Positions 18,201 through 63,328 of a DNA stretch of 64,000 bases are shown here, one piece after another. The notes under the pieces were generated by a model. That model had not been told where the DNA came from and did no database searches. It saw nothing but the letters and a program-made list of their open reading frames with translations. Within the stretch, counting starts at the first letter, position 1, and every line of letters starts with the position of its first letter. A program made the position numbers and the translations under genes. Location: positions 1-64,000 of the IMG/VR virus record IMGVR_UViG_3300005056_000001. One strand, given 5' to 3'.

Positions 18201-20543
18201 TACCTTGACAGAACAAAGAACCTTCATGATGTCCAAATACTTTGAACGTATATTTTTATATACCTCTTTTGGTTTTCCATACGAGGACAGTTTCTCTAGG
18301 TCGTCGCTGCTTGGGTGTTGTTCGCAACTGATTCCGAATTGTGAATTAATCAACCCCTTTAGCAGACTACCAACCTTCATTCGTTTGATGTGGTACTTAA
18401 AATCCTCGGCTTTCCATGCATCCCAATCATCATACTGTATCGGACGGATCAAAGAAATATCAACCTCGAACAAGTCAAACGCCACATCGTCAAAAAGTTT
18501 ATTGTCGTATGCCCCACGGTTTCTATTGACTCGTGCAATAACCTTCTTGTCCAATTTTCGCATCTCACGTATCTCTGACGAGTTTAGCTTTATATTGAAA
18601 CTGTCTGTGGTTTCGACCAAATATCTAAGGTCTGAAGAGCCCGACAGAATATATCTATAATTGTCAAAATTCTTGGACAACGGTTTTAGGTTTTCGCCCA
18701 AACGTTTTTTTACTACTGCAAGGTTGCTGATCTTAATGTTTGTGATATAACACATAGGGATTGCAGACAACACAAAATATTGTTTGTGGTGCATATTGAC
18801 AAACGTCTCGTCGCTGTGTATCAAGGCGATTCCTTGTTCTATTTTACGCATTGAACCATCAAGAATTGTGTCACCACCACCCTTTTTGACCAATCCACCA
18901 ATTGATCCGTCGTCAATTGTTAGCGTTTCGCCAAAAAAATCATGTAGTTCTACATCCTTCAATACTTCCATAACCAAAGTAAATGCATGCGCATAGCCTA
19001 ATTCCTGCAACAACAACGACGATTCGCTATCCTTTTCGGTGTACCTTGGCAAGACTCCGTTGCCTCCCTCCCTGTTCATTGGGGGCGGTTGTAAATACTT
19101 AAAAATGACATGAACCCCTGTTCCTGAAACAGATAGTTTTGACATAAGATAAGGCTCACAGTAGGTATTCGAAAGCCGCTCATGTAGGTATTTTAGTACA
19201 CGAGAGGCAAATTGTTGCTTAACCTTTAGACTTTGTCCCACTCTTTCAATGACGGGTACCAAGGATTGTGTAAATTTTAAATCTAGATCTAAAAATATTA
19301 GACCATTACACATCTCGGCACCAATTCCGAATTTTGTATTCGGTCTTACAGGGGAATGTGTCTGAAACAAGAATGCAATCTTGTCGGACTTAAGGAATTT
19401 TCCGTCAAGAACATAGGGCTCCACAAGATTAAATATCTCTTGTGTGACACCAAACACTTTCTTTGTGTGACTCGCATTCTTGATAGAAGTCGGAAGTGCC
19501 AAAGCAGAAAAACATTCGATTAATTCGCCTATTCTGTAACTGTTGTTGTAACTGCTGACTTTTGTTAGACACTCTTCCCATGTCTCTTTATATTTGGAAT
19601 TTCTAAAGAACGTTTCTATCTTTTTTGTTGATATACTAGAACTATTACAATACGTGAAATATTTCCCTAGCAACGGGAATGGGCTGCTAAACTTTTTTCT
19701 TGCATCCTTTGTGAATAACACGGCAACCTCTGAAAAGCGTGTACCAAAAAACTTTTCTATGGTGTGTGGAAGCTTTAGTTCTTCTTTTTTTCGTAGAAAT
19801 GCCTTTTGTGTGCTGTCGTGGCCCATCTTTGCATAGTCGTATTTGCTGTTGTAGCTTTTTGTCAGGAACACCAACTCGAGTAATGAAAGAAATTCGGTGG
19901 TACCCTCTTCTTGGTTGTTGTTCAGAGACCTGCTAGTCGAGCTTTTTGCATTTTTTGCGGTGGTGTTAATTAGGTTTTTAAGACCGAACCTAGGGTTTGT
20001 TATCTCAAGAAGTGTCTGTATTCCTATACCATTTTCCTCGCAAAAATCCCGACCCTCGTTCGTCATTAACTTTTTGTGGAGCGCACCAAACACCTCAAGC
20101 AATTCGTTTTCGGCCTTGATGTTGTTCTCAATACCATAATCATACTCAAGCCCTTGTTTGTTGTATGGCAATTTTGTCCATTCTTGAAATAGCGGTCTCT
20201 CGAATCCTATCTCGTCCATGAATTTGGCAGACAGCCTTTCGCCTAGATCTCCACGTTTTTTGGCTGTTTTATAAAAATCCCTGTCGATTGACGAGTAGCG
20301 GTAACACTTCAAGAATGCGATCGTGTAAAGAACGGCATCTGCCATATCCAATCTAGACAATCTTAGGGTGTATTTGTTCTGAGTAGGGTCGCTCAGTTCG
20401 GTTTTGCATATGCCGTCAACCTTGTAATTATAAAACGCCATTGTGGCACCGCTCAGAATAGTTTCCTCTAACAAAGACACATCAAGTTCATTGCTGTTTT
20501 TGTTAAAAAAAATTTTCTTTGCAAGCATCCAAAATGAATTCAT
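15291..20543 (-). CDS. AEP primase-polymerase fused to SF2 (origin-binding-type) helicase
   Basis: AEP motifs LIFLDLD and SVSGTGVHVIF; SF2 motifs ARAGAGKTT, AIDEIH, GMTGT, SVGVDI, QFGNRLR. Confidence 0.8.
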   Translation of the reverse strand: MNSFWMLAKKIFFNKNSNELDVSLLEETILSGATMAFYNYKVDGICKTELSDPTQNKYTLRLSRLDMADAVLYTIAFLKCYRYSSIDRDFYKTAKKRGDLGERLSAKFMDEIGFERPLFQEWTKLPYNKQGLEYDYGIENNIKAENELLEVFGALHKKLMTNEGRDFCEENGIGIQTLLEITNPRFGLKNLINTTAKNAKSSTSRSLNNNQEEGTTEFLSLLELVFLTKSYNSKYDYAKMGHDSTQKAFLRKKEELKLPHTIEKFFGTRFSEVAVLFTKDARKKFSSPFPLLGKYFTYCNSSSISTKKIETFFRNSKYKETWEECLTKVSSYNNSYRIGELIECFSALALPTSIKNASHTKKVFGVTQEIFNLVEPYVLDGKFLKSDKIAFLFQTHSPVRPNTKFGIGAEMCNGLIFLDLDLKFTQSLVPVIERVGQSLKVKQQFASRVLKYLHERLSNTYCEPYLMSKLSVSGTGVHVIFKYLQPPPMNREGGNGVLPRYTEKDSESSLLLQELGYAHAFTLVMEVLKDVELHDFFGETLTIDDGSIGGLVKKGGGDTILDGSMRKIEQGIALIHSDETFVNMHHKQYFVLSAIPMCYITNIKISNLAVVKKRLGENLKPLSKNFDNYRYILSGSSDLRYLVETTDSFNIKLNSSEIREMRKLDKKVIARVNRNRGAYDNKLFDDVAFDLFEVDISLIRPIQYDDWDAWKAEDFKYHIKRMKVGSLLKGLINSQFGISCEQHPSSDDLEKLSSYGKPKEVYKNIRSKYLDIMKVLCSVKVKKSHHDSHEWEEHLFDDGECPWRNTYLTKSSIHRKVGIEMFKSSGLYIRRMEQTLTKEGLPNFKQQYYKQMESTDPKVGKVAKLVASVLSLQNDKVVTDSDFKFLNYKNACQLLIDKNPMNMDIEIVPEDIGGGFYMSDYAPLLEKFLDTRCFNYINARAGAGKTTYFTELATKHSKRVLLVMPYTAPMDSKFGMEAQNREIDIIMNNKNLHPSEKEDWVAAIQAFKPFSGSKNNKEMMEAFKVGTSSVVTFDKFSRMDVELLLNYDYVAIDEIHILATETIRSADADSVCTMALKRIREVLQYKEENPYERVPFIIGMTGTHIYEVNLFRMCEKDVKHGGKKIEVRNIKLEIPHQSQKNMNIILTNSSKDCKTLLCKKIATAMIENRTVICPTDEGSFRAEEIVMGINAHLEHMDSDPLTKDDWHYYKRATKDSVTSKAINGQSVIPNDIKVLFCSVYLSVGVDIKNLSEDKDIEVISTFAKYSAQTLEQFGNRLRKQNINTSLIRSVYNETEKNKKKYYELKRDYNNNLDYRFLKGIHKVIDGEMRARISDDKCVAYFNHYISLNDEKITEQQKIAIWADLSKRFTYTYEDYMGEIKVVQDNLMVLRYIAEQQYNRLGTNIRYIANMFKKHYNYNSVNTTYIDIDEPHIVGAIEQSRSENSEERKKFSVDVAKEIHEFLKTTKPKDIESFISSCKTEMVPSNNNKITINQGDGATLLIEYPEKHHKRLKNITSKLLPIAKQYAYNPKNFSILVDMCMNEKSDGLVIAELERFSNLIDFRNYDILDNYIMVVQQLERLALAKRGKRMSSHIETLESAENKIRKKMIKDITLHLSNNTKPNTQSTIGIAEDTKKKMFEAYESLTKINYVISEDTYAKLKMSVYKLATMVLMNNDVKGISTISDYNRSRLENRVEENLKTFFIIKTNPHTKERDVRLRILPSDYRHIMDNIVKTYGNDNMKFYEFEKYLI

Positions 20544-41558: not shown

Positions 41559-42626
41559 ATGAATTTTTTCAAAAAAGGAAGAAAGGTTGCAAGTGCAGAT
41601 GATTACAAGAAAAGAGAAGAAGAAGCCGCAAAGAGCGACTTTGATGGTGTCTCTTGGAAAGACTCTGCCATCGAATTAAATTTTGGTGAAGAAATTGGAC
41701 TGCGTATCATTGGTGCCGCATTCGAGGGCGAAGATTTTGACGAAGAATTGTGTAATTACCACCACTTTGTTGAACACAAATCTTGCTATGCAGTAGGAGG
41801 ATTTGTTGATGGTCACAATCCTAGATACTATTCCACAAAAACCAATATTAAGACATCAGGAACAGAACCGCCTGCAAGAGCCTTCAAAAAGGTATGGGAC
41901 AAATGGGGCAAGGACTCTGTTCAATTGACACAATTCCAAGAAGTATTGGCACTCAGAGCACACCGAATGTATTGGGTTCAGGTTGTCGAATCAAAATTGG
42001 AAAAGTATCCTGTTGGGAGCATTTTCCGTTTTGCCTGTCCTAGAGACAAGGAAAAGAAATATTGGATGAGTCAATTATTGGACGGTGCAGCAAACCAAAA
42101 GCTAAACTCTTACGACCCATACGAAACCTATGCTGTCCACCCTCTTACAATCGCATGTACTAAAGGTGACCATGGTCGTGACTTTTCTACCTCAAAAATT
42201 GAATACCAATTACCTATGCTAGGTTATTTAGTTTCAAAAGAAATTGTAGAAAAAGTTGGCGGTAAATTTGTGCCATATGTTGATTACAACAAAACCACGT
42301 TCGAGGAATACCACAACGTCGTTCTGACGGACAAGTTAGACGACAAGGCATGGGAATGGTTGGCAATGCAAGAATTCATGAAACAACTATATGCAAACGA
42401 GGCAATAACGCTTGTTCCAAAGAACGGCGAAGAGCTCGAAACGTATGTTGTTGATTTATGCGAAACAATCAAAGACCTTTCGTTTTTCAAGGTTGACGAG
42501 GGTGAGGATATCGGAGATGATTCTGCAAGTGCCTACTTGGATGAAGACAAGAAGACGGATGCAACAACAACAGCCGCCACAACAACAACAGACGATGATG
42601 ACACAGGAGATGATTTGCCTTTCTAA
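41559..42626 (+). CDS. single-stranded DNA-binding protein (gp32-like)
   Basis: Aromatic-rich core; long acidic tail ending DDLPF; replication context. Confidence 0.65.
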   Translation: MNFFKKGRKVASADDYKKREEEAAKSDFDGVSWKDSAIELNFGEEIGLRIIGAAFEGEDFDEELCNYHHFVEHKSCYAVGGFVDGHNPRYYSTKTNIKTSGTEPPARAFKKVWDKWGKDSVQLTQFQEVLALRAHRMYWVQVVESKLEKYPVGSIFRFACPRDKEKKYWMSQLLDGAANQKLNSYDPYETYAVHPLTIACTKGDHGRDFSTSKIEYQLPMLGYLVSKEIVEKVGGKFVPYVDYNKTTFEEYHNVVLTDKLDDKAWEWLAMQEFMKQLYANEAITLVPKNGEELETYVVDLCETIKDLSFFKVDEGEDIGDDSASAYLDEDKKTDATTTAATTTTDDDDTGDDLPF

Positions 42627-42644: not shown

Positions 42645-42687
42645 CAAAAAAAAAGATTGCAAATTAATTTGCAATCTTTTTTGTTTT
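42645..42687 (+). terminator. intrinsic terminator
   Basis: aaaaaagattgcaaat-ta-atttgcaatctttttt inverted repeat. Confidence 0.8.
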
Positions 42688-42758
42688 TACGCAAATTAGT
42701 GCTATTTTTGTAGAACACTACAGAAAGGATCTGTAACATACCCAAAAATAAGAACCGT

Positions 42759-43625
42759 ATGAACAATTCTGTTAAAAATAGCAATGGTACTATCCCACTA
42801 AAGGAACAAATAGCTTCCATAAGAAAAGTACTTACACAAGAAAATGTAAGACAGTCATTGGCGTTGGGCAAGCGACACGAAAACAAAGACCTGACCTCTG
42901 ATTTGTATACCTATGCCACATTCAGACTAGACAAATGGAAACCGACGGTCATCGACGGGAACCTAGAAGATACAGAGGTTATCATTAAGTTTTGGACAAA
43001 ACTCTTGTCTGATGGCGTAAAAAAAATACTAAGGCTCCAAACCTACCTGCCAACACTCCAAAAAATTGCGCTTGAAAACTCTCAACGTGCGGCCAAGACA
43101 TATATCATAAGATATAGAGTGCGTGACCTGACCTCTGATTTGTACCTATTGGCAATGAGCAGGCTCGGACGTAATTGGTTCCCGCCACCAACAGATTTGG
43201 AGGGTATCTCAAAGGCTTGGGGTGCATACCTAATATCATCATTCAGACATGTTATCGACACCGAACTCAAGGACGATGTCATAAAAAAATGTTCCAAGAA
43301 CGGAGAAACGTTTACTCTCATAAAACAATTCGAGGACGGATTTCCTGATTGGTTCGAGGGTTCAAGTCAAAAAAGAAATACCAAGGGGTTTAACGACATT
43401 TTGGATATCCTCAAAAAAGAGCTGACCACCATAGAATATGGTGTGTTACTAATGAGGAGCAAGATATTCCTGAAGCAAATGACTTTTGACAGCATTGCCG
43501 AATGGTTCAACAACAACCCTGCATTTTGGCATCTTGACATGACAAAGAGTAAGGTACACTCTTGCTTTAAAAAGGCCCAAATAAAGGCCCAAAAAGTACT
43601 AACAGAAGAAGGTTGCACACTTTAA
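42759..43625 (+). CDS. sigma-70-like factor, paralog A (duplicated sigma2-like segment)
   Basis: DLTSDLY x2; AWGAYL..SFR; sigma4-like LTTIEY..LLMR...MTFDSIAE...TKSKVHSCFKKA..K. Confidence 0.6.
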   Translation: MNNSVKNSNGTIPLKEQIASIRKVLTQENVRQSLALGKRHENKDLTSDLYTYATFRLDKWKPTVIDGNLEDTEVIIKFWTKLLSDGVKKILRLQTYLPTLQKIALENSQRAAKTYIIRYRVRDLTSDLYLLAMSRLGRNWFPPPTDLEGISKAWGAYLISSFRHVIDTELKDDVIKKCSKNGETFTLIKQFEDGFPDWFEGSSQKRNTKGFNDILDILKKELTTIEYGVLLMRSKIFLKQMTFDSIAEWFNNNPAFWHLDMTKSKVHSCFKKAQIKAQKVLTEEGCTL

Positions 43626-43634
43626 ACTAAGACA

Positions 43635-44429
43635 ATGGTTATAGAACAAATAGACATGTCCGAGGTAAAGGACATGTTAAATTCTCGGGTCATCAAGCAC
43701 ACGACAGCCCTGACTAAATCCTGTGGTGACATGTTTGGCACAAAGTTATATGAGATAGCCAACAACGAGGCACAAGAATGGATAGAACAGCACAAAAATT
43801 TATCACCAAGCGATTTGTATGTGTTGTGGGAAAAAAGACTTTCGTGTCATTCTGACAAAATTTCTAGCGTACACAAAGTATTTCCTGTTCTAAAAGAAAT
43901 AGCGATCGAGATGTGTACCTATTATGGCAACCACTATAATATAAATTATAATTATGGCGACCTAACAAGCGAATTATACATCTTGGCAATGAGCAGACTT
44001 GCCCGAAAATGGTTTCTGCCACAGGACAACATCGAGGGTATAAAGAAGGCATGGCGGGCCTACCTAAGAGATTCGTTTCGTTCGGTTCTCAAAACGGAGA
44101 GTAAAAGTGGTGTTATACCCACACACATGAGAAATGGCGAGTACTTTAGTCCAATGAAGGATTTTTCGGACGGGCTGCCTGATTGGATTTCTTTCGAGAA
44201 CCCTTCATCGGATAACGGGTACATTAACGATATGTTACAATTATTCAAGAATGTGCTGAGTCCCAATGAGTACACAATTTTAATAATGAGAACAGGAATA
44301 TATTTCCCGATAATGAAATACCAACACATTAGCGATTGTTTGTCGGAAATCGACAACAAGGAGTACACAAAAGGATACATCCATTATGTTTATAAAACAG
44401 CCTGTAAAAAATGTGTTAAATATTTATAA
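43635..44429 (+). CDS. sigma-70-like factor, paralog B
   Basis: DLTSELYILAMSRL, AWRAYL..SFR, LSPNEY.ILIMR...MKYQHISD...TKGYIH..YKTA.KK. Confidence 0.6.
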   Translation: MVIEQIDMSEVKDMLNSRVIKHTTALTKSCGDMFGTKLYEIANNEAQEWIEQHKNLSPSDLYVLWEKRLSCHSDKISSVHKVFPVLKEIAIEMCTYYGNHYNINYNYGDLTSELYILAMSRLARKWFLPQDNIEGIKKAWRAYLRDSFRSVLKTESKSGVIPTHMRNGEYFSPMKDFSDGLPDWISFENPSSDNGYINDMLQLFKNVLSPNEYTILIMRTGIYFPIMKYQHISDCLSEIDNKEYTKGYIHYVYKTACKKCVKYL

Positions 44430-44726: not shown

Positions 44727-46148
44727 TTAATTTATCGGTAATGATTGATTGCTAGATTGTGCCCAAACCGAAGGGAATAACGGAAGTAATACAATTGTTT
44801 CGGGAAGCAATGCTGTCCCGTCAGAATTTCCATACGTATAATAATGATTCAGCAAGTCATTCAATGCGATCACAATGTCCTCCACACTATCTTTTGATAT
44901 AGAAAAGTCAAACAATTGGTAATTTTCGAGGACAAACTTGTATCTGTCGTATATAAATTTTGTGTTAATAAATCCAAGACCCTCGGTGCTTAGCCAAAAC
45001 TTTGGATCCGTGAACAAAACAACGACCTCATCAAAGACCTCTGTTTTCATTAACGTTAAAGTTCTTTCAATGTATGTCGGCGAATATCCAACATCGGCAT
45101 CCAATATTTGTTGACAGTACTGTCTGAGAAAAGGATATGCCGTTGTTACAGGCGTAGAAAGTAGCTGTGTGGCTATTGTTATAGAGAGGCTATACAAATC
45201 ATCCAAGCTAAAAATCGTAAGCGATTGTGCCACATTTAGGGCAATTGCCTCTTCAACCGACAAATCTATAACAACACTCTCAATGTCTGCCGCCAATACA
45301 TCCACACCAATAACATCAAAATCAATCCCTGCATTACCAAGCGCAGTCTGTAGGGTTGCCGAGTCTGTAAACGATTCGAACTCTGATTGTATCACACCCA
45401 CCGCCGTATCAAAGGTTGCCTGATTGGGCAATGGTATAACAATATCGGTACTCATCAATGCATACAAATCAACCAACTCCGACGGGTTTATCACAGATAC
45501 AACCTCTGTTCCAAATTGCGACGAGTCCTCCACAACACGGTAAAACAAAAAATTGACATTAAAATCAGGATAAGAAACCCAATCCGAGCCCCCAATCCCA
45601 TCGCCCCATCCAACGATATAGTAGGCAAACCCTGTGCTCATCAATGATGTTGCCAATCCAACAGGAATGTTGCCATTAATACTTGCCACATCCTGAAATT
45701 CAGGAAACACATCCCCCGAAAACACAACAGTCTGATAGTTTGAATTGACAATTAAATCAACAATAGTTATCGAATAAATATCATGCCCCTCCTTTGCTTG
45801 TTGTCCGACCAAGCCATCAACACCATTGGCAGCTATTCCGTTAACCAACGGGAATTTACCCGCATATGGCGTGGTTTGTGACAGGTTATATTGATATACA
45901 GTTTGGTCACCATTTTCTGCCGTGACTGTTATTGACGAGGCTATTCCGTTAACAACAACCGATGCCTTGGCGTCGATTTGAAAATTCAGATTCGCAATAT
46001 CCTCTATCGTGAATAAAATAATTTCAATCGGGTCTGTTGAGGGAATAGGAAAATAAAAATTTACATTATTCCGAAGCATATAAACAGACTTCAATGTGCT
46101 GTCCGTTGAAATTATTCCTGATGACGGGTCTACTAATTTTATAAGCAT
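44727..46148 (-). CDS. putative virion protein
   Basis: Acidic protein; start MLIKLV 15 nt after GTACATA. Confidence 0.6.
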   Translation of the reverse strand: MLIKLVDPSSGIISTDSTLKSVYMLRNNVNFYFPIPSTDPIEIILFTIEDIANLNFQIDAKASVVVNGIASSITVTAENGDQTVYQYNLSQTTPYAGKFPLVNGIAANGVDGLVGQQAKEGHDIYSITIVDLIVNSNYQTVVFSGDVFPEFQDVASINGNIPVGLATSLMSTGFAYYIVGWGDGIGGSDWVSYPDFNVNFLFYRVVEDSSQFGTEVVSVINPSELVDLYALMSTDIVIPLPNQATFDTAVGVIQSEFESFTDSATLQTALGNAGIDFDVIGVDVLAADIESVVIDLSVEEAIALNVAQSLTIFSLDDLYSLSITIATQLLSTPVTTAYPFLRQYCQQILDADVGYSPTYIERTLTLMKTEVFDEVVVLFTDPKFWLSTEGLGFINTKFIYDRYKFVLENYQLFDFSISKDSVEDIVIALNDLLNHYYTYGNSDGTALLPETIVLLPLFPSVWAQSSNQSLPIN

Positions 46149-46229
46149 AAGGCTGTTTTCTAATATGTACAAAAATGCCCAACCAAAAGGGTCGGGCACA
46201 TTATAAAAGTTGTTATGTTAGGTGTTTTC

Positions 46230-48097: not shown

Positions 48098-49072
48098 CTA
48101 GTCCAAAAGACCGTGCATGTCCACAATAATCAAAACCTTATTCTGTAACGACAAGGCATTCTTTTTTAGGTCTGCCTTTAATTTTTTAATGTCAAAATCC
48201 ACCTCAGACTCCTCGGCCCATTTAATGGCATCTTCGTCATTGGAAAACGTTTCCATGGTATCAAATTTTGAGTCTTTTGCCTCACGAATCTGTGATCTGC
48301 GACCTTTCCCTGCCAACATCTCACGAATCTCTCTACCACGGTCGCCATTGCCGTTATTTCTAATGGCTTTACGCTCCATGTAAGACCGTTTTAATTCTCT
48401 TTCGGAGTTGTCATTGCCGTATTTTTGGTAAGCCATGTCGTCATACCCATTTGTGTTCATGTCTTTGTCTCCGCTGTACATATCGTCTCCACTATAAAGC
48501 ATGTCGAAAGTCATGGTGTCATTGTCCATGTTCATATCATTTCTCATGCCACGACCCATGCCCATATCATTCTCCATATTCATGGCATTTCTCATGCCAC
48601 GACCAAAGTCCATATCTTGCGTCTCATAGTCATCCATATCATTTTCGAAGTCCATATCATAGTCGTCCATATCCATGGCATTGTCAAGAAAGCTGTCGGG
48701 GTTAAAATCCATACCCATATTGCTATACGTTGACTTGTATTCGTCGCCTCCATACTCCATTTCATCCACATCCTCGAATCCCATATAGGTAGAAACTAAC
48801 TCGTGTTCGTTGCCCATGTCATAATAAAACTCTTGTTCGCCACAAAGACACTCGTTGTAGTGCTTTGCCACGCTATCATAAGGACACACAATTAATTTGC
48901 CCTTGGAACTTCTTGTGATTATCACGTTTTTCAGTCCGCTTTCGGCAATTGCGTCTTTTACATTTTTCTTGTCCTCGTTTTTTAGTGATTTAAAAACGGC
49001 AGCACTTTTTCCTACTAATACTTCAAGAGCCTCTTTTAATTCTTTTTGGTTGGTAATCCTTTTAGTTGTCAT
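48098..49072 (-). CDS. low-complexity Met/Asp/Asn-rich protein, possible head scaffold/internal protein
   Basis: MDxDxM and GRGMRN repeats; triple GTACATA upstream. Confidence 0.55.
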   Translation of the reverse strand: MTTKRITNQKELKEALEVLVGKSAAVFKSLKNEDKKNVKDAIAESGLKNVIITRSSKGKLIVCPYDSVAKHYNECLCGEQEFYYDMGNEHELVSTYMGFEDVDEMEYGGDEYKSTYSNMGMDFNPDSFLDNAMDMDDYDMDFENDMDDYETQDMDFGRGMRNAMNMENDMGMGRGMRNDMNMDNDTMTFDMLYSGDDMYSGDKDMNTNGYDDMAYQKYGNDNSERELKRSYMERKAIRNNGNGDRGREIREMLAGKGRRSQIREAKDSKFDTMETFSNDEDAIKWAEESEVDFDIKKLKADLKKNALSLQNKVLIIVDMHGLLD

Positions 49073-49164
49073 TATTGTATATTTAATGTTTTTCAATACG
49101 ATGTATGTACCATTGGTATTGTGGTATGTACCATTGGTATTTTTGGTATGTACAAATGGAGGTG

Positions 49165-50767: not shown

Positions 50768-50885
50768 ATGTAGTATAGCAGGGCTGATGATAGATTTATC
50801 ATCAGCCTTTAGTATCGTGTATGTATTGTGCTTGGTCATGATTTGTATTTTTAAATAGGTCTGTGTCGTATCTGTTATAAACTAG

Positions 50886-50972
50886 TAGAAGAAGTGGGAG
50901 TCGAACCCACACGAGTCGTTAGCTCCGAACGGTTTTCAAAACCGTGGCCACCGCCCATTGGCTTGCTCTTCC
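50886..50972 (-). tRNA. tRNA-Ser(TGA)
   Basis: ACGGT-TTTGAAA-ACCGT anticodon arm; long variable arm; TTCGA T loop. Confidence 0.85.
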
Positions 50973-51283
50973 TAATCTACAATACAACAACAAATTTCTT
51001 CAACTAATTGGGTGTCGTTGACAACATATGCGTTTCTTGATGGTAAAAATAAGAATGCCTTTGAATTGTTGACCCGTTCGATAAAGTCTGTTGTTATTAA
51101 ACCGTCTCTTACAGAAAAAATTTCTAGACTTTTCATTACACTTTCGGCAACAGCACTCACGGTTTCGTGTTTTTCAACAACTCTATTTTCGGAATCGCTC
51201 CAAAATACATGGGGACAGGAAACCTCAATAATCAATTCTTCCTTAATTCCATATTTTCCGACCAAATCATTCTTAGTAATCAT
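50972..51283 (-). CDS. hypothetical protein within tRNA cluster
   Basis: ORF. Confidence 0.6.
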   Translation of the reverse strand: MITKNDLVGKYGIKEELIIEVSCPHVFWSDSENRVVEKHETVSAVAESVMKSLEIFSVRDGLITTDFIERVNNSKAFLFLPSRNAYVVNDTQLVEEICCCIVD

Positions 51284-51354
51284 ATTGTATTTTGTTTTGT
51301 TTTGTTTTGTTAATAATCACATAACGCAATTATACAATATTTATTCAAAACTTG

Positions 51355-51437
51355 TGGGGGTAGAAGGACTCGAACCTACTCAGTCATAGACACTAGATTT
51401 ACAGTCTAGCACGGCTCTCCAACTCCGTCGCACTCCC
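51355..51437 (-). tRNA. tRNA-Tyr(GTA)
   Basis: CTAGA-CTGTAAA-TCTAG anticodon arm; long variable arm. Confidence 0.9.
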
Positions 51438-51545
51438 ATATTAACATGGTATATTTTTTCGATTATGACACTTTGTTTGGTTAAGCTATCATGGAAACTT
51501 TCCACGGAAGGGCTTCCACCTTCTTGTCTTCATAAAAGTTTCTTG

Positions 51546-51620
51546 GGCACATGACGGGATTCGAACCCGTGACCCTCGGTACCACAAACCGATGCTCTAA
51601 CCGTCTGAGCTACACGAACC
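51546..51620 (-). tRNA. tRNA-His(GTG)
   Basis: TCGGT-TTGTGGT-ACCGA anticodon arm; G-1 and C73. Confidence 0.9.
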
Positions 51621-51631
51621 ATATATTTTAG

Positions 51632-51704
51632 TGGAGCAGGAGGGACTTGAACCCACATCCTTCGCATTGCAAATGCGATGCTCAGCCAATTGAGCTACTG
51701 TCCC
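51632..51704 (-). tRNA. tRNA-Ala(TGC)
   Basis: TCGCA-TTTGCAA-TGCGA anticodon arm; G3:U70; A73. Confidence 0.92.
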
Positions 51705-52238: not shown

Positions 52239-52718
52239 ATGACAACACAATTAATAAACCATCTTTCAAGCGAGTCTGAGCGTGTCGGTGCCTTGGATAC
52301 CATTTACTCACAAATGATTGTATCAAAAAGCCTGTCTGCCTATCCAAACTTTTCGGATTGGCTTTATAAAAAGGTTGGCCTTGGTATAGTCATGAACCAA
52401 AGGAGTATTGTGCTAAAATACATAAACAAAAGGCTTGTGGGCTTTGTCATACTAAAACATCACAAAGAGCATAAATTATGCACCTTTTTTATACTCGACA
52501 ACTATCGTAAGCAAGGAATTGGTCATAAAATGATGACGGAATCCATGGCATTTTTGAATACATTCGGGAATGTGCCTATTACGATAACAATGTCCGTGTT
52601 TGTTGTTTCGGATTTTAACAAAATTCTTACGAATCACGGTTTTGTCTTTGATTATGTCGTTCAATCCGAATACACAAAGGATGTTCCTGAGTACCACCAC
52701 ATCAGGCCCTTGTCCTAA
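52239..52718 (+). CDS. GNAT acetyltransferase
   Basis: KLCTFFILDNYRKQGIG acetyl-CoA motif A; HGF motif B. Confidence 0.8.
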   Translation: MTTQLINHLSSESERVGALDTIYSQMIVSKSLSAYPNFSDWLYKKVGLGIVMNQRSIVLKYINKRLVGFVILKHHKEHKLCTFFILDNYRKQGIGHKMMTESMAFLNTFGNVPITITMSVFVVSDFNKILTNHGFVFDYVVQSEYTKDVPEYHHIRPLS

Positions 52719-53065
52719 TCCCTTTTGAATGCACTTTTTCTCATCTTGAATCTATTGCATAACTTCTCAATAACACCGTCGGACAATTCACGGTCGCCCT
52801 TTAGTATATCCGAAACATGTTCTTCTGAAACATCCAATATTTTTGCCAAATCTTTTTGGTTTATTTTGTGGTCACACATTAGCGAATTAATCATTTCTAA
52901 TGGAGTACATTCGGTTTCGTCAAAACCATTTCTTGTGTCCCATTCATCAATAAACGTTTCCAATTCCTCTATTTTTGAATCATATAACACATCGTTCTTG
53001 TGGACATAGTCCTCTAACAGGTCACAATATCTATTATACATGTCAATATCTATTATTCGTTTCAT
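52715..53065 (-). CDS. HigA-like HTH antitoxin (orphan)
   Basis: YNRYCDLLE...IEELETFIDEWD...PLEMINSLM...QKDLAKILDVSEEHVSDILKGDRELS. Confidence 0.75.
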   Translation of the reverse strand: MKRIIDIDMYNRYCDLLEDYVHKNDVLYDSKIEELETFIDEWDTRNGFDETECTPLEMINSLMCDHKINQKDLAKILDVSEEHVSDILKGDRELSDGVIEKLCNRFKMRKSAFKRD

Positions 53066-53090
53066 TGCTAATTGGTTTAATTTTATTGTT

Positions 53091-53291
53091 TTAATTGGTG
53101 GCTTGTCTACAGTCAGAGACATCTAACGCTACCATCGTAAGACACAGCCATATGCTGCCTGTGGCATAGATAGATTGATAGATTATATTGGGTAGTTCAG
53201 GGTAAAAAACAGACAGTAAAAGTGCTGATGTTATGGTAACAATAGGTGGTAGTAACAATAATGCCCGTGTGGATGTTTTTTGTAGATTCAT
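53091..53291 (-). CDS. small two-TM membrane protein
   Basis: Two hydrophobic segments. Confidence 0.5.
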   Translation of the reverse strand: MNLQKTSTRALLLLPPIVTITSALLLSVFYPELPNIIYQSIYATGSIWLCLTMVALDVSDCRQATN

Positions 53292-60361: not shown

Positions 60362-63328
60362 TTACACAATCTTAGAAGTTCCCCATGACAGACTTTTCTT
60401 GCCGTCATTGTCCTCGGTGCGCTCCATTAGATTATCAAACAAAGTCGAATCAATTCCAAATTCTTCAAATACTCCATCAAGCGTGGCGGTGTCTTTGGTT
60501 TTGATAAACTCGTTAATTTTTTCTTTGTCCATTAGCAGGGCCAAGATGTTTTTTTCTATTGTTCCGTCATACGACACGAAATGTACATCAGTATGATTCA
60601 CAGAATTATAACGAATGAAACGGAAATAAAACTGTTCCATTCTTGGGATATTCCATTGAAGACCCTCGATGATTACCTTGTCACAAGTCGGAATGTTAAC
60701 CGATGACTTCAGGGATTGTTGTGTGCATACCAAAATACCATTCTCTGTGGCCTCGAATCTGTCTAGGATTGGTTGACGCTTGTCGATACTTACGTCCCCT
60801 GTAATCACAAAAATTTGACGCTCAGGAAAAAGAATTGTAAGGTTTTCGACATATAGTTTTATGGTTTCTTTTCGGGTACATCCAATTGCAACTTTTTCGT
60901 CAAATTTTTGACACAATTGGGCAATTTTATAAAACTTGGTTGGTAGGTCTCCCTTGTAATCCGAAAATGAATTCGGGGTACTACATGCCTTGTACAACAA
61001 TTGCATTTGGCGAACTATTCTGAGGGCAGCATCTTTTCGTGTGCTGCCTGTTGACCCATAAAACTCGCTGATTATGCGGTGGAACTCACGGATTATCACG
61101 CCATAAATTCTTGCCTCATCGGCTGTTTGGTTCACATACTCTGTGTGTACCGTGAATTTTTCTCCTGCAATTTCTTTGAATTTTCTTGTTATGATTGATT
61201 GGTCAATGATCGAGACCAATTTGTCTTGATTGAAAACGTCTTGGTTTTGTTTCTTGATTCCAAAAACGGTTGCCTTGGAAGGATTAAAACAAGACTTGAA
61301 TTGTCCGAATCCCAAACGTGCCTTGTATGGCTGCATGTGGTTTTTATTGTCACGACTTTTTATGTCGCCTTCCTTGTTTTGGACATAGGTCATTTTACAG
61401 GAGTCCAACATATTCACAGAATTATTGAACAACAATTCTAATTGTGGGTATAGTTCTGTGATATTGTTTCTTGTGGTGGTTCCTGTTGCCAAAAACTTTC
61501 TTTTAACACGTCTAAAAATGTCACGGCTTGCACGAGATCGTTTTGATGTGTTTGAACAAATTTCGTCGGACTCATCCATGACAAGACAAACCTTATTACT
61601 CAACGACTTAACCAATTTTTGTAGCTCTTTTTTGAACTTGATAAGCATATTAAAACTAATCAACACAATAGAACCACTGTTTAAAATATGGCTTCTTTTG
61701 GTTATTATGGTATACTCCTCGCCCTGTGTATTCAAAAACTCTGTCCATGTTGTTTTAATGGCCAAAGAAGGAGCCACTATAAATGTTTTTTTGACTTTTG
61801 GTTGGTTGTATTTTGCAAATGCATAACACCCGCCCGTTTTTCCGCAACCCTGTTGCCAATTACAGATTGAATATTGTTTTTGTAAAAAAAGGTTTAGGTC
61901 ATGCGCCTGTATATTATTAAACTTACAGGTCACGGTTTTTTTGTTGCCTAATTTGTCGGTGTCTTCTCTCAGAAAACTAAAATCTTTTAACCATGCAGCA
62001 ATAGACTCACTTTGGGTCATTTCTGAAAATGGTGTTGTTATCTTTTTATTCTCTGCGATCTTGCGTGTGATCAGTTTATTGTATGGGTGGTCAAGATCTT
62101 TTGTCGGTATAAGGTTGGTACCCAACACCAAGTCGCTAAGGGAATACTTTTTCTTTTGTGCCTTTGGGGCCTTACCCTTGACAACAAAGCCATGACGGTG
62201 TTTTACGACTCTTAGAGTCTTGTTGGCCGCCTTTTTATTTTGGGTCTTAACAATTCTTTTTAGATAGGCAAGAACCTTGTTTTCGGTAAGCATTTTCTTG
62301 CTCCATTCGCTGTCCTCCATGCCCATTGGCTTGGTCTGTGTATTGAATTTTTCGATATACGAAATCGCACTGTCCAACTTGGCAGATATTTCGCCGTGTT
62401 GCTTGATTTCAAAAAGGTATTTCTTGACTCTAAACCCAAAATCATCATTTGTTAGCGACTTGTTAAACTCAAGACGTAACGCCGATTTAATATTGTGGCG
62501 CAATGCCAATTTCTTGGAAATTTCTGATTTTGTGCTAACACTATTCGTGTAAGGAACATCCTTGAGATGTTCGGACTTTTTTTGAAGATAGATAACCTTG
62601 GTATTATAATTCTTTACCCCCAAGGCACCAAAGGCATCATTTGTCAGTTGATATTGACCCACGAAATTAAACATCCTGTCTAGGTCATTTATTTGAGACT
62701 TATAATACATCTCGTCGCCAAGGTACGAAGTCGGAACAATGGCCGCCACAACCCCGCCATTTTTTAACATCTTGGCACACATTTTAAAAAACAGTGCATG
62801 GCTTCTGACATGCGTGTTTGTTTCGGTGTCGAACCACTCAAGACTAAAAGGAGGATTGCCCAACACGACATCAAACTTATTTTCGATGGTATTGTTTGGC
62901 AGACTTGCCTCGGTAAAGTCTGCATCAGGATACAGACGGTTGGCAACCTGCACAGACTTTGGACAAATATCCATCCCATGAAAAACGGATTCGTTAGGCA
63001 CAAAATTACAAAACACACCCATTCCACATGTCGGATCCACAATCAATTCGTTTGAGGCAAGACCCACGATATCCACAATATCACTTGCAATCATGGCAGG
63101 TGTATAAAATTGGCCATTCTCGACCTCCTTTTTTGCTGCCGAGTACTCATAGTAATTACGATAGTCTTTAAATTCTAAACCATGCAACCCTCCATCACCC
63201 GTATAGGCATTAAAAATTTGCTCATTGCTAATGGCAGCGGAATCCAATTGGATTGCCATTAAGATCTTACTATTGACCGTTTTGCGGTGGTCTTGTGGTA
63301 TTGTATCGGTAAGGATATTGTATTTCAT
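60362..63328 (-). CDS. N6-adenine DNA methyltransferase / SNF2-type helicase fusion (DarB-like)
   Basis: GQFYTP, DPTCGMG, NPPF; helicase QQGCGKT, MDESD, ATGT, SVNI, QFYFRFIR. Confidence 0.8.
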   Translation of the reverse strand: MKYNILTDTIPQDHRKTVNSKILMAIQLDSAAISNEQIFNAYTGDGGLHGLEFKDYRNYYEYSAAKKEVENGQFYTPAMIASDIVDIVGLASNELIVDPTCGMGVFCNFVPNESVFHGMDICPKSVQVANRLYPDADFTEASLPNNTIENKFDVVLGNPPFSLEWFDTETNTHVRSHALFFKMCAKMLKNGGVVAAIVPTSYLGDEMYYKSQINDLDRMFNFVGQYQLTNDAFGALGVKNYNTKVIYLQKKSEHLKDVPYTNSVSTKSEISKKLALRHNIKSALRLEFNKSLTNDDFGFRVKKYLFEIKQHGEISAKLDSAISYIEKFNTQTKPMGMEDSEWSKKMLTENKVLAYLKRIVKTQNKKAANKTLRVVKHRHGFVVKGKAPKAQKKKYSLSDLVLGTNLIPTKDLDHPYNKLITRKIAENKKITTPFSEMTQSESIAAWLKDFSFLREDTDKLGNKKTVTCKFNNIQAHDLNLFLQKQYSICNWQQGCGKTGGCYAFAKYNQPKVKKTFIVAPSLAIKTTWTEFLNTQGEEYTIITKRSHILNSGSIVLISFNMLIKFKKELQKLVKSLSNKVCLVMDESDEICSNTSKRSRASRDIFRRVKRKFLATGTTTRNNITELYPQLELLFNNSVNMLDSCKMTYVQNKEGDIKSRDNKNHMQPYKARLGFGQFKSCFNPSKATVFGIKKQNQDVFNQDKLVSIIDQSIITRKFKEIAGEKFTVHTEYVNQTADEARIYGVIIREFHRIISEFYGSTGSTRKDAALRIVRQMQLLYKACSTPNSFSDYKGDLPTKFYKIAQLCQKFDEKVAIGCTRKETIKLYVENLTILFPERQIFVITGDVSIDKRQPILDRFEATENGILVCTQQSLKSSVNIPTCDKVIIEGLQWNIPRMEQFYFRFIRYNSVNHTDVHFVSYDGTIEKNILALLMDKEKINEFIKTKDTATLDGVFEEFGIDSTLFDNLMERTEDNDGKKSLSWGTSKIV

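What the first reader, a model, noticed from the sequence alone, without database searches (positions are those of the whole stretch)
42759..44429. Two tandem sigma-like paralogs, one with a duplicated sigma2-like segment
Seen: adjacent ORFs share DLTS(D/E)LY.LAMSRL.R.WF.P...EGI.KAW.AYL..SFR and a C-terminal sigma4-like HTH with divergent recognition helices. Paralog A carries an extra copy of the DLTSDLY segment, with an identical 20-mer at 42888 and 43125. Inference: a middle/late sigma cascade analogous to SPO1, one member of which may read the GTACATA motif.
Basis: partly seen in the sequence, partly recalled or inferred. Interest (0 to 1): 0.6.

Follow-up and report, generated by a model that had tools for sequence, protein, structure and literature searches.

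The report
Tandem divergent phage sigma factors
Two neighbouring genes of a 368-kb marine jumbo phage encode very divergent RNA polymerase sigma factors, probably made early to redirect the host polymerase; this is a known phage strategy, here with an unusual extra domain.

Summary
The observation largely holds. ORF A (42759-43625, 288 aa) and ORF B (43635-44429, 264 aa) are true paralogs: 35% identity over 270 aa, E 2e-47. The exact 20-mer at 42888 and 43125 is real.

Neither protein hits Pfam or PHROGs. Only four other relatives exist among 1.8 billion cluster representatives. Sigma-70-family membership rests on these points:
- Relatives hit Sigma70_r4 (E 1.4e-6) and TIGR02937 (E 8e-9).
- In an AlphaFold model (pLDDT 78), every top Foldseek hit is a sigma factor.
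- The sigma4 match has Z 9.8 at 1.6 A rmsd; the sigma2+sigma4 match has Z 9.6.

The duplicated sigma2-like segment is real but not special to A. The N-terminal domain is an old, degenerate copy present in A, B and two relatives. Only the exact heptapeptide/20-mer is A-specific, probably from a short gene conversion.

A follows a terminator and a Bacteroidota host-type promoter (TTTG-N19-TAnnTTTG). B starts 9 nt after A. Both therefore look early and co-transcribed, not sequential as in SPO1.

GTACATA is a genuine late promoter element in front of 46 genes, including sheath, terminase, protease and baseplate genes. It has no -35 partner. The phage also encodes a 117-aa sigma2-only protein that fits this motif at least as well.

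Verdict: new variant of a known kind, moderate interest.

The parts
42649..42682 (+). Intrinsic-terminator-like hairpin (15-bp stem, T-run) closing the upstream SSB-like gene
   Evidence: Terminator scan; sequence.
42680..42710 (+). Candidate host (Bacteroidota sigmaA-type) promoter: TTTG at 42680-42683, 19-nt spacer, TATTTTTG (TAnnTTTG) at 42703-42710
   Evidence: Read. The same terminator + TTTG-N20-TATATTTG layout precedes the ortholog P0003 in L004. The composite pattern is 35% intergenic against 11% of the genome. The consensus itself is from my own knowledge of Bacteroides/Flavobacterium promoters.
42759..43625 (+). Paralog A, 288 aa, divergent sigma-70-family protein
42798..43034 (+). 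A, N-terminal helical domain (aa 14-92): degenerate old duplicate of the sigma2-like core
   Evidence: hhalign of N-domain against central profile: E 4e-6 with A, E 8.5e-5 without A, 0/100 shuffles. VIA match to SigR sigma2 fragment 1h3l_B: Z 7.8, rmsd 2.9, 78 aa. Unrelated helical proteins score alike.
42888..42907 (+). First copy of the exact 20-mer (encodes DLTSDLY in the N-domain)
43035..43283 (+). A, sigma2-like core (aa 93-175). DLTSDLY aligns with the region 2.2 DL-x-QE motif; K-A-W-G-A-Y-L..S-F-R lies where regions 2.3/2.4 are
   Evidence: Two-domain structural matches: 6dv9_F SigL Z 9.6, 159 aa; T. thermophilus sigmaA 186-419 on model 98-288, Z 9.7. hhalign to a 7-sigma reference is in register but weak: E 0.029, 0/60 shuffles. 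No Pfam Sigma70_r2 hit.
43125..43144 (+). Second copy of the exact 20-mer (DLTSDLY of the sigma2-like core)
43380..43610 (+). A, sigma4 domain (aa 208-284) with HTH
   Evidence: VIA Z 9.8, rmsd 1.6 A over 64 aa to SigW (5wuq_A), with many sigma4 structures following. hhalign 95%, E 3.6e-8 to the sigma reference alignment. Relatives hit Sigma70_r4 at E 1.4e-6.
43635..44429 (+). Paralog B, 264 aa, same three-part architecture. Starts 9 nt after A's stop. Its stop is followed directly (one base later) by the stop of a convergent gene
43866..44114 (+). B, sigma2-like core (about aa 78-160), 64% identical to A's
44211..44420 (+). B, sigma4-like HTH domain (about aa 193-262), 30% identical to A's
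46164..46170 (-). Nearest GTACATA late-promoter element. It follows a terminator hairpin (46199-46175) and lies 16 nt before the ATG at about 46148 of the neighbouring minus-strand gene
   Evidence: The ortholog of that gene in L008 is also preceded by GTACATA, 12 nt upstream.

Best explanation
A and B are two highly divergent phage sigma-70-family proteins of two-domain (group 4/ECF-like) design. Each has a sigma2-like core, a disordered linker and a sigma4 HTH. In front sits an N-terminal helical domain that is an old, degenerate duplicate of the sigma2-like core.

The window is the first 64 kb of a complete 368-kb jumbo myophage. Its host is probably a marine member of the Bacteroidota. No RNA polymerase of its own was found.

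Inferred mechanism:
1. The pair is transcribed early as one unit by host sigmaA holoenzyme, from a TTTG/TAnnTTTG promoter that follows a terminator.
2. The proteins bind host core RNA polymerase through the conserved sigma2-like core (64% identical between A and B).
3. They redirect it to phage promoters. Their divergent sigma4 domains (30% identical) give A and B different upstream-element preferences.

Shown: paralogy, the fold-level sigma assignment, the ancient internal duplication, and the promoter/terminator layout. Inferred: RNAP binding, early timing, and which promoters they read.
For: Paralogy:
- E 2e-47.
- The family is real but tiny. An exhaustive profile search of 1.8e9 representatives finds only P0003-P0006. 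A word search finds nothing else.

Sequence links to sigma factors:
- P0005 hits Pfam Sigma70_r4 at E 1.4e-6.
- P0005 aa 58-172 hits TIGR02937 positions 50-160 at E 8e-9.
- P0006 aa 10-191 hits TIGR02937 positions 6-162 at E 0.02.
- The family core profile against a 7-sigma alignment gives 95% probability, E 3.6e-8, over sigma4.
- The sigma2 part aligns in register (DLTGELY on DLIQEG) at E 0.029, 0/60 shuffles.

Structure:
- AF2 with the 6-sequence alignment gives pLDDT 78.4.
- All 50 top Foldseek PDB hits are sigma factors. Most named top BFVD hits are phage sigma factors; many rows carry no name.
- VIA gives Z 9.8 at 1.6 A for sigma4 and Z 9.6-9.7 for sigma2+sigma4.
- ESM Atlas: feature score 0.96 to a sigma-70 cluster, and all ten structural rows are sigma families.

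Context:
- No RNAP beta (PF00562) or T7-type RNAP (PF00940) hit in the genome.
- Terminator plus host-type promoter lie upstream of A, and likewise upstream of P0003.
- No GTACATA lies in or before the pair.
- The gene order RuvC-like / SSB-like / sigma-like / convergent 94-aa + 490-aa genes is conserved in L004 and L008.
- Tail sheath relatives are Tenacibaculum, Prevotella, Chryseobacterium and Flavobacterium phages.
- Comparable Bacteroidota jumbo phages without RNAP but with a shared sigma factor are described in PMC12619734.
Against: - A and B themselves hit no Pfam, PHROG or NCBIfam sigma model.
- The best family score (35.3 bits) is below the TIGR02937 cut-off of 42.9.
- No member's central domain hits Sigma70_r2.
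- Structural Z values of 9-10 are in the range that helical proteins can reach without kinship (notes).
- The complex prediction of A's sigma2-like core with Bacteroides beta-prime 180-380 gave no verdict.
- No RNA data exist for this phage.
- No two-block promoter class that A or B could read was identified.
- The PF00940 search rang in no control genome, so that absence is weak.
Confidence: 0.6

Rival explanations
1. A and/or B is the factor that reads the GTACATA element, so the pair is the late (or middle-plus-late) arm of an SPO1-like cascade.
For: - GTACATA is a genuine promoter-like element. Of 93 copies, 54 are intergenic although only 11% of the genome is, and 47 lie within 100 nt upstream of a co-oriented gene.
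- It precedes 46 genes, including tail sheath, tail protein, prohead protease, large terminase and baseplate wedge.
- Every one-mismatch variant is far less enriched.
- The motif is also found 12-14 nt before genes in the distant relatives' contigs L007 and L008, which carry the sigma family.
- A and B look early, as a sigma for later classes should.
Against: - The element stands alone. No position from -60 to -4 carries information, apart from a T-rich -3..-1. A and B, however, keep a complete sigma4 domain, which normally reads a -35 element.
- A 117-aa sigma2-only protein (genome 260799-261152, minus strand; Sigma70_r2 E 1e-3, phrog_234 'late sigma' E 4e-3, Atlas 0.98 to viral sigma2-only clusters) sits in the late region. 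It matches the T4 gp55 precedent for single-element late promoters.
- A and B are co-transcribed, not sequential.
Confidence: 0.22
2. A and B have a sigma-like fold but do not act as initiation factors. They would be DNA-binding regulators or decoys: activators or repressors using the sigma4 HTH on repeated operator-like sites such as the GTTAA-N6-GTTAA direct repeats, or competitors that hold host core or host sigma.
For: - The sigma4 HTH is the only part with solid sequence-level support.
- The sigma2 part fails Pfam.
- The genome carries 26 intergenic GTTAA-N6-GTTAA repeats at a fixed 70-118 nt before start codons, upstream of host-type -7 elements. They need a binding protein.
- Two tandem paralogs with diverged HTHs would suit a tandem site.
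Against: - The most conserved part of the family is the central sigma2-like block, not the HTH.
- That block aligns in register with region 2.2 of real sigmas.
- Whole-chain collinear matches to ECF sigmas: 159 of 174 residues of SigL and TIGR02937 positions 6-162 in P0006.
- Relatives carry a single copy, so a heterodimer is not required.
Confidence: 0.13
3. The internal repeat in A is a chance or compositional resemblance between amphipathic helices, and the 20-mer is a coincidence. The N-terminal domain would then be an unrelated helical extension, for example a region-1.1/1.2-like domain.
For: - Structural hits of the N-domain alone are not specific: SigR sigma2 Z 7.8, but DUF89 Z 7.5 and a designed helical repeat Z 6.9.
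- The N-domain profile against the genuine sigma2 reference is not significant: E 0.17, 2/60 shuffles.
- With B placed first, the A-free comparison falls to noise.
Against: - Four profile-profile set-ups, three of them with A left out of one or both profiles, give scores of 19.8-27.7. Shuffle maxima are 12.9-17.0, and 0/100 shuffles reach the observed score in each.
- P0003 shows the same pattern (x-L-T-G-D/E-F/L-Y ... L..W..P.D ... W-G) in both of its domains.
- Identical codons across the heptapeptide have P about 6e-4.
Confidence: 0.05

Closest known systems
Two-domain (group 4 / ECF-type) sigma-70 factors, e.g. M. tuberculosis SigL/SigH, B. subtilis SigW, E. coli RpoE
   Same: Sigma2 core plus flexible linker plus sigma4 HTH, with no sigma3. 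Best structural matches: 6dv9_F Z 9.6 over 159 aa; 5wuq_A sigma4 Z 9.8 at 1.6 A. TIGR02937 is the only whole-length family model hit by relatives.
   Different: Sequence is so diverged that A and B pass no curated model. There is an extra N-terminal domain of about 80 aa derived from the sigma2-like core. The linker is about 35 aa and contains a short hairpin. No anti-sigma partner is evident. The proteins are encoded by a phage.
Bacillus phage SPO1 sigma cascade (gp28, then gp33/gp34); from my own knowledge and the abstract of PMC13401047
   Same: The phage relies on host core RNAP. Early genes use the host primary sigma, and phage-encoded sigma-family proteins take over later classes. More than one phage sigma-like gene is present.
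   Different: No detectable sequence relation. A and B are adjacent, share one promoter and appear co-expressed, so they do not form successive steps. SPO1 middle and late promoters are two-block, whereas the only clear phage-specific element here is single-block.
T4 late transcription: gp55 (sigma2-only) reading the single element TATAAATA; from my own knowledge
   Same: A strict single -10-like late element without -35 (GTACATA here). It lies in front of virion genes, often right after a terminator. A small sigma2-only protein is present in the genome.
   Different: This concerns the 117-aa protein, not A or B. Its match to phrog_234 is weak (E 4e-3). No gp45-type clamp C-domain was found, and gp33 was not searched.
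Sigma factors of other Bacteroidota jumbo phages (Tenacibaculum phage PTm1 sigma factor; the 'moraphage' sigma VOG, PMC12619734)
   Same: Jumbo myophages of Flavobacteriia without their own RNAP and with phage sigma genes. PTm1 sigma appears among the structural hits. The tail sheath of this phage is 29-34% identical to those of pT24 and PTm1.
   Different: The A/B family profile finds nothing in pT24 or PTm1. Those sigmas are detectable with TIGR02937, while A and B are not. The pT24 sheath gene has no GTACATA upstream.

Membership tests
Sigma-70 family | Region 4 (sigma4) helix-turn-helix domain | tested here: met
   - Pfam Sigma70_r4 E 1.4e-6 and Sigma70_r4_2 E 6e-4 in relatives.
- hhalign 95%, E 3.6e-8.
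- VIA Z 9.8, rmsd 1.6 A, 64 aa.
Sigma-70 family | Region 2 (sigma2) domain with regions 2.1-2.4 | tested here: inconclusive
   For:
- Collinear two-domain structural matches at Z 9.6-9.7.
- TIGR02937 positions 6-162 in P0006 (E 0.02) and 50-160 in P0005.
- In-register hhalign at E 0.029, 0/60 shuffles.

Against:
- No Pfam Sigma70_r2 hit for any central domain, even at E 10.
Sigma-70 family | Score over a curated family threshold (TIGR02937, 42.9 bits) | tested here: not met
   Best is 35.3 bits in P0005. A, B, P0003 and P0004 give no hit. Membership is therefore by transitive homology and fold, not by a curated model.
Sigma-70 family | Binds core RNAP (beta-prime clamp helices, beta flap) | tested here: inconclusive
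   Complex prediction of A 93-176 with RPOC_BACTN 180-380 gave no verdict, score 0.00. It is evidence neither way and needs an experiment.
Sigma-70 family | Confers promoter-specific initiation | not testable with these tools
   No transcript data. The sequencing-run search found only small DNA shares and no RNA run.
SPO1-type sequential sigma cascade | Each phage sigma gene is transcribed from the promoter class of the preceding step | tested here: not met
   For the A-to-B step: the gap is 9 nt, there is one upstream terminator plus host-type promoter, and no GTACATA lies in 42759-44429. A step from host sigmaA to A+B fits.
SPO1-type sequential sigma cascade | Sequence homology to gp28/gp34 | tested here: not met
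   tblastn of A against 50,697 phage records at E 0.01 gave no match.
T4 gp55-type late sigma (for the 117-aa ORF, not A or B) | Small sigma2-only protein; family model phrog_234 | tested here: inconclusive
   - phrog_234 E 3.9e-3; Sigma70_r2 E 1e-3.
- Atlas feature score 0.98 to viral clusters of about 115 aa, some with Sigma70_r2.

The most novel reading that the evidence does not exclude
This clade of Bacteroidota jumbo phages runs a three-tier programme with an unusual sigma architecture:
1. Host sigmaA makes A and B.
2. A and B are sigma2'-sigma2-sigma4 proteins. Their degenerate N-terminal sigma2 copy acts as a built-in regulatory module, for example region-1.1-like autoinhibition or a second polymerase or DNA contact. 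They read distinct middle promoters through their diverged sigma4 domains.
3. A separate sigma2-only protein reads the strict GTACATA late heptamer.

An internally duplicated sigma2 module in a sigma factor would be, to my knowledge, a new domain architecture.
Probability: 0.2. Interest if true: 0.6.

Novelty: new variant of a known kind. Interest (0 to 1): 0.4.

Why it matters
Phage-encoded sigma factors are a classic way to time gene expression. Almost nothing is known about transcription control in jumbo phages of Bacteroidota, whose hosts use unusual promoters (TTTG / TAnnTTTG).

This locus offers a compact, testable system:
- an orphan sigma family (six cluster representatives in 1.8 billion) with an internally duplicated sigma2-like module;
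- a tandem pair with a conserved polymerase-binding core and diverged DNA-reading domains;
- a very strict late heptamer in front of 46 genes;
- a third, sigma2-only candidate.

It would let one ask how many sigma-like factors such a phage needs and what the extra domain does. It does not overturn any principle. The basic strategy is known.

Tried and rejected
- blastn and tblastn of the locus and of A against 50,697 phage records: no match.
- Pfam, PHROGs and NCBIfam on A and B: nothing.
- Pfam on the isolated central and N-terminal domains of all members at E 10: nothing relevant.
- Word-index protein search with B and with the six-member alignment: only family members.
- Relatives cannot be drawn for a virus record.
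- First AF2 model with a two-sequence alignment: pLDDT 52, not used.
- PDB sequence profile search: only noise.
- hhalign of the family against RpoE alone: sigma4 only, E 0.012.
- Complex prediction of A's sigma2-like core with Bacteroides beta-prime 180-380: no verdict, not evidence either way.
- The A/B profile finds nothing in Tenacibaculum phages pT24 and PTm1.
- The gp45 clamp C-domain is not found in the genome.
- Sequencing runs: only small shares in a subsurface and a seawater metagenome, and no RNA. I therefore laid no reads.
- A dyad search for a two-block promoter class that A or B might read gave only hairpins and repeat cassettes, with no clear candidate.
- I rejected the idea that the 135-aa ORF at 52715-53122 (weak Sigma70_r4 hit) is sigma-related. 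By its sequence it looks like an XRE-type HTH (not tested further).
Full report
**What the window is**

The window is the first 64 kb of a 368,109-bp virus record with direct terminal repeats, rated complete. GC content is 38%. My rough ORF call gives 526 genes covering 89% of the genome.

Identifiable proteins point to a contractile-tailed jumbo phage: tail sheath, tail protein, baseplate wedge, prohead protease and large terminase, plus a helicase and a RuvC-like resolvase.

The tail sheath is 34% identical to that of Tenacibaculum phage pT24. Weaker matches go to Tenacibaculum PTm1/PTm5, Prevotella megaphages, and Chryseobacterium and Flavobacterium phages. The only sequencing runs holding parts of the locus are a subsurface and a seawater metagenome, with small shares. 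A host in the Bacteroidota, probably marine Flavobacteriia, is therefore likely but not shown.

No RNA polymerase beta-type (PF00562) or T7-type (PF00940) gene was found. The second search rang in no control genome, so it is weak evidence.

**Check of the observation**

- Two same-strand ORFs lie at 42759-43625 (A, 288 aa) and 43635-44429 (B, 264 aa).
- They are paralogs: 35% identity over 270 aligned residues, E 2e-47. They are the only two copies in the genome.
- The exact 20-mer is at 42888-42907 and 43125-43144.

**Are they sigma-like?**

A and B themselves hit nothing in Pfam, PHROGs or NCBIfam. An exhaustive profile search of 1.84 billion cluster representatives found only four further relatives: P0003 (280 aa), P0004 (300 aa), P0005 (183 aa) and P0006 (194 aa). 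Word-index searches added none.

Through these relatives the link to sigma factors becomes visible:
- P0005 hits Pfam Sigma70_r4 at E 1.4e-6.
- P0005 also hits the whole-length model TIGR02937 (sigma70-ECF) at E 8e-9, over model positions 50-160. At 35.3 bits this is under the curated 42.9.
- P0006 matches TIGR02937 positions 6-162 collinearly at E 0.02.

I built a small reference alignment of E. coli RpoD, RpoS, RpoH, FliA, RpoE and FecI and the PTm1 phage sigma.
- The family's core profile matches its region 4 with 95% probability, E 3.6e-8.
- The central domain aligns in register with region 2.1/2.2, with family DLTGELY on sigma DLIQEG. This is weak: E 0.029, although 0 of 60 column shuffles reach it.

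An AlphaFold2 model of A made with the six-sequence alignment has mean pLDDT 78.4. Confidence is low only at residues 1-10 and in the linker 172-207.
- All 50 best Foldseek matches in the PDB are sigma factors, though E-values are weak (best 4.7e-3).
- The best BFVD matches are mostly phage sigma factors.
- The Foldseek-independent VIA search gives sigma4 matches at Z 9.8 (SigW, rmsd 1.6 A over 64 residues, model 208-284).
- It also gives two-domain matches: SigL at Z 9.6, 159 of 174 residues on model 91-288.
- T. thermophilus sigmaA residues 186-419 map onto model 98-288 at Z 9.7.
- The ESM Atlas agrees: feature score 0.96 to a sigma-70 cluster, and ten of ten structural rows are sigma families.

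The tools warn that Z near 9-10 is not decisive for helical proteins. The unanimity of the hits, the collinearity over two domains and the independent sequence links make sigma-70-family kinship the clear best reading.

The central domain fails Pfam Sigma70_r2 in every member. I therefore mark sigma2 as supported by fold and register, not by a curated model.

**The 'duplicated segment'**

A's residues 39-92 resemble its residues 118-168: 35% identity over 54 aa.

Profile-profile comparison of the N-terminal domain (A, B, P0003, P0004) with the central domain (all six members) gives E 4e-6. Leaving A out of both profiles still gives score 27.5, E 8.5e-5. Three other set-ups give scores of 19.8-27.7. 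None of 100 column shuffles reaches the observed score in any set-up. One badly ordered run fell to noise.

The N-domain is therefore an old, degenerate copy of the sigma2-like core. It is present in all four long members, B included, and absent from the two short members.

Structurally, the N-domain matches the SigR sigma2 fragment (Z 7.8, 78 residues), but unrelated helical proteins score similarly. Its profile does not match genuine sigma2 sequences.

What is peculiar to A is the letter-perfect heptapeptide:
- Identical codons at all six variable positions have P about 6e-4 given the amino acids.
- The flanks are only 40% identical.
- B uses other codons.

A short intragenic gene conversion is the simplest account.

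**History of the pair**

In a six-taxon tree A pairs with P0003 (support 91/91) and B branches outside. The A/B split thus seems older than the split between this phage and the one behind L004.

No second copy lies next to the gene in any relative's contig. In L004 and L008 this holds for at least 1.5 kb downstream.

Between A and B the sigma2-like core is 64% identical. The N-domain is 25% identical, sigma4 30%, the recognition helix 37% and the preceding HTH helix 7%.

**Expression signals**

Between the upstream gene and A lie two elements:
- a strong terminator-like hairpin at 42649-42682;
- TTTG at 42680-42683, a 19-nt spacer, and TATTTTTG at 42703-42710.

From my own knowledge this fits the Bacteroides/Flavobacterium primary-sigma consensus (-33 TTTG, -7 TAnnTTTG).

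The ortholog P0003 has the same layout: hairpin, then TTTG-N20-TATATTTG. B begins 9 nt after A's stop, and no GTACATA lies in or before the pair. The pair thus looks like one early transcription unit read by host holoenzyme. This is inference from sequence, and no RNA data exist.

**GTACATA**

- The heptamer occurs 93 times. Of these, 54 are intergenic (11% of the genome is intergenic), and 47 lie within 100 nt upstream of a co-oriented gene.
- It is the most enriched upstream 7-mer, 12-fold.
- Every single-mismatch variant is far less enriched.
- It precedes 46 genes. These include tail sheath, tail protein, prohead protease, large terminase and baseplate wedge.
- It often follows a terminator directly.
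- It recurs 12-14 nt before genes in the relatives' contigs L007 and L008.
- Only -3..-1 (T-rich) and +11..+13 counted from the G (A-rich, 5-7 nt past the motif) carry further information. There is no -35 element.

It is therefore a late, single-element promoter.

Who reads it is open. A and B keep sigma4, which a single-element promoter does not need. The genome also encodes a 117-aa sigma2-only protein at 260799-261152 on the minus strand (Sigma70_r2 E 1e-3, phrog_234 'late sigma' E 4e-3, Atlas 0.98 to viral sigma2-only clusters). It matches the T4 gp55 precedent.

**Verdict**

- A and B are divergent phage sigma-70-family proteins: about 0.85 for kinship.
- They most likely serve as early-made sigma factors for host core RNAP: 0.6 for the whole explanation.
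- An SPO1-style sequential cascade between them is not supported.
- Their link to GTACATA is possible but no better than the sigma2-only alternative (about 0.22).
- A role as sigma-fold DNA-binding regulators, for instance on the GTTAA repeats, cannot be excluded (about 0.13).
- The kind of system is known. The architecture with an internally duplicated sigma2-like module and the extreme divergence make it a new variant.

**Limits**

- The complex prediction gave no verdict.
- Gene calls outside the window are my own crude ORF calls.

Noticed in passing
Genome G000:C1:260799-261152 (minus strand; L009:1444-1794): A 117-aa sigma2-only ORF: Pfam Sigma70_r2 E 1e-3, phrog_234 'late sigma transcription factor' E 4e-3, ESM Atlas 0.98 to viral clusters of about 115 aa. 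It sits in the late-gene region, beside a divergent gene with two GTACATA sites. It is a candidate gp55-like late sigma.
   Followed up: partly
window 21104, 32506, 46164, 48025, 49104/49125/49147, 50037 and 40 more genes genome-wide: GTACATA is a strict late-promoter heptamer: 54 of 93 copies are intergenic, it precedes 46 genes including virion genes, and it has no -35 element. Three copies in a 21-22-nt tandem array lie at 49103-49153, before the gene 48098-49096.
   Followed up: yes
window 2708, 5368, 30547, 31265, 32027, 33276, 56468, 58752, 63399 (all minus strand); 17 more intergenic copies elsewhere in the genome: A regulatory cassette. It starts with a GTTAA-N6-GTTAA direct repeat (11-bp register). 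About 35-40 nt further on, often across a GC hairpin, comes a -7-like element: TAnnTTTG (often followed by TAAGGCAATCA), TAnTATTG or GTACTT(A/G)GTG. The start codon lies 70-118 nt from the repeat. Of 34 copies, 26 are intergenic. The binding factor is unknown. In L004 the repeat occurs in the opposite orientation.
   Followed up: partly
window 11069 and 11457 (minus strand); genome 157665, 158988, 175305, 176330, 177312: Seven near-identical cassettes of about 45 nt: TTACGTAAAACTTGCGTAAT, 7 nt, then CTTGTTGTAGATTTG. The end fits a host-type -7 element (TAGATTTG). The front looks operator-like.
   Followed up: no
window 41559-42626: The 355-aa gene just upstream of A ends in an acidic tip (…DDDDTGDDLPF), like the C-terminal tail of bacterial SSB. 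Its L007 counterpart ends …DGDDLPF. It has no family hit. The order RuvC-like / this gene / sigma-like gene is conserved in L004, L007 and L008.
   Followed up: partly
window 44727-46199 (minus strand): The listed GTG start is probably wrong. A terminator hairpin (46199-46175) and GTACATA (46164-46170) lie inside the annotated 5' end, so translation most likely begins at the ATG near 46148.
   Followed up: partly
window 50885-51704 (minus strand): A cluster of four tRNA genes: Ser-TGA, Tyr-GTA, His-GTG and Ala-TGC.
   Followed up: no
window 15291-20543 (minus strand) and genome 358132-363363 (minus strand): Two giant ORFs (1750 and 1743 aa). The first has no Pfam or PHROG family. The second has only a C-terminal Laminin_G_3 domain and is preceded by GTACATA.
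   Followed up: no
window 60362-63328 (minus strand): A 988-aa protein matching phrog_24008 (helicase) end to end. Its N-terminal part is methyltransferase-like / DarB-like.
   Followed up: no
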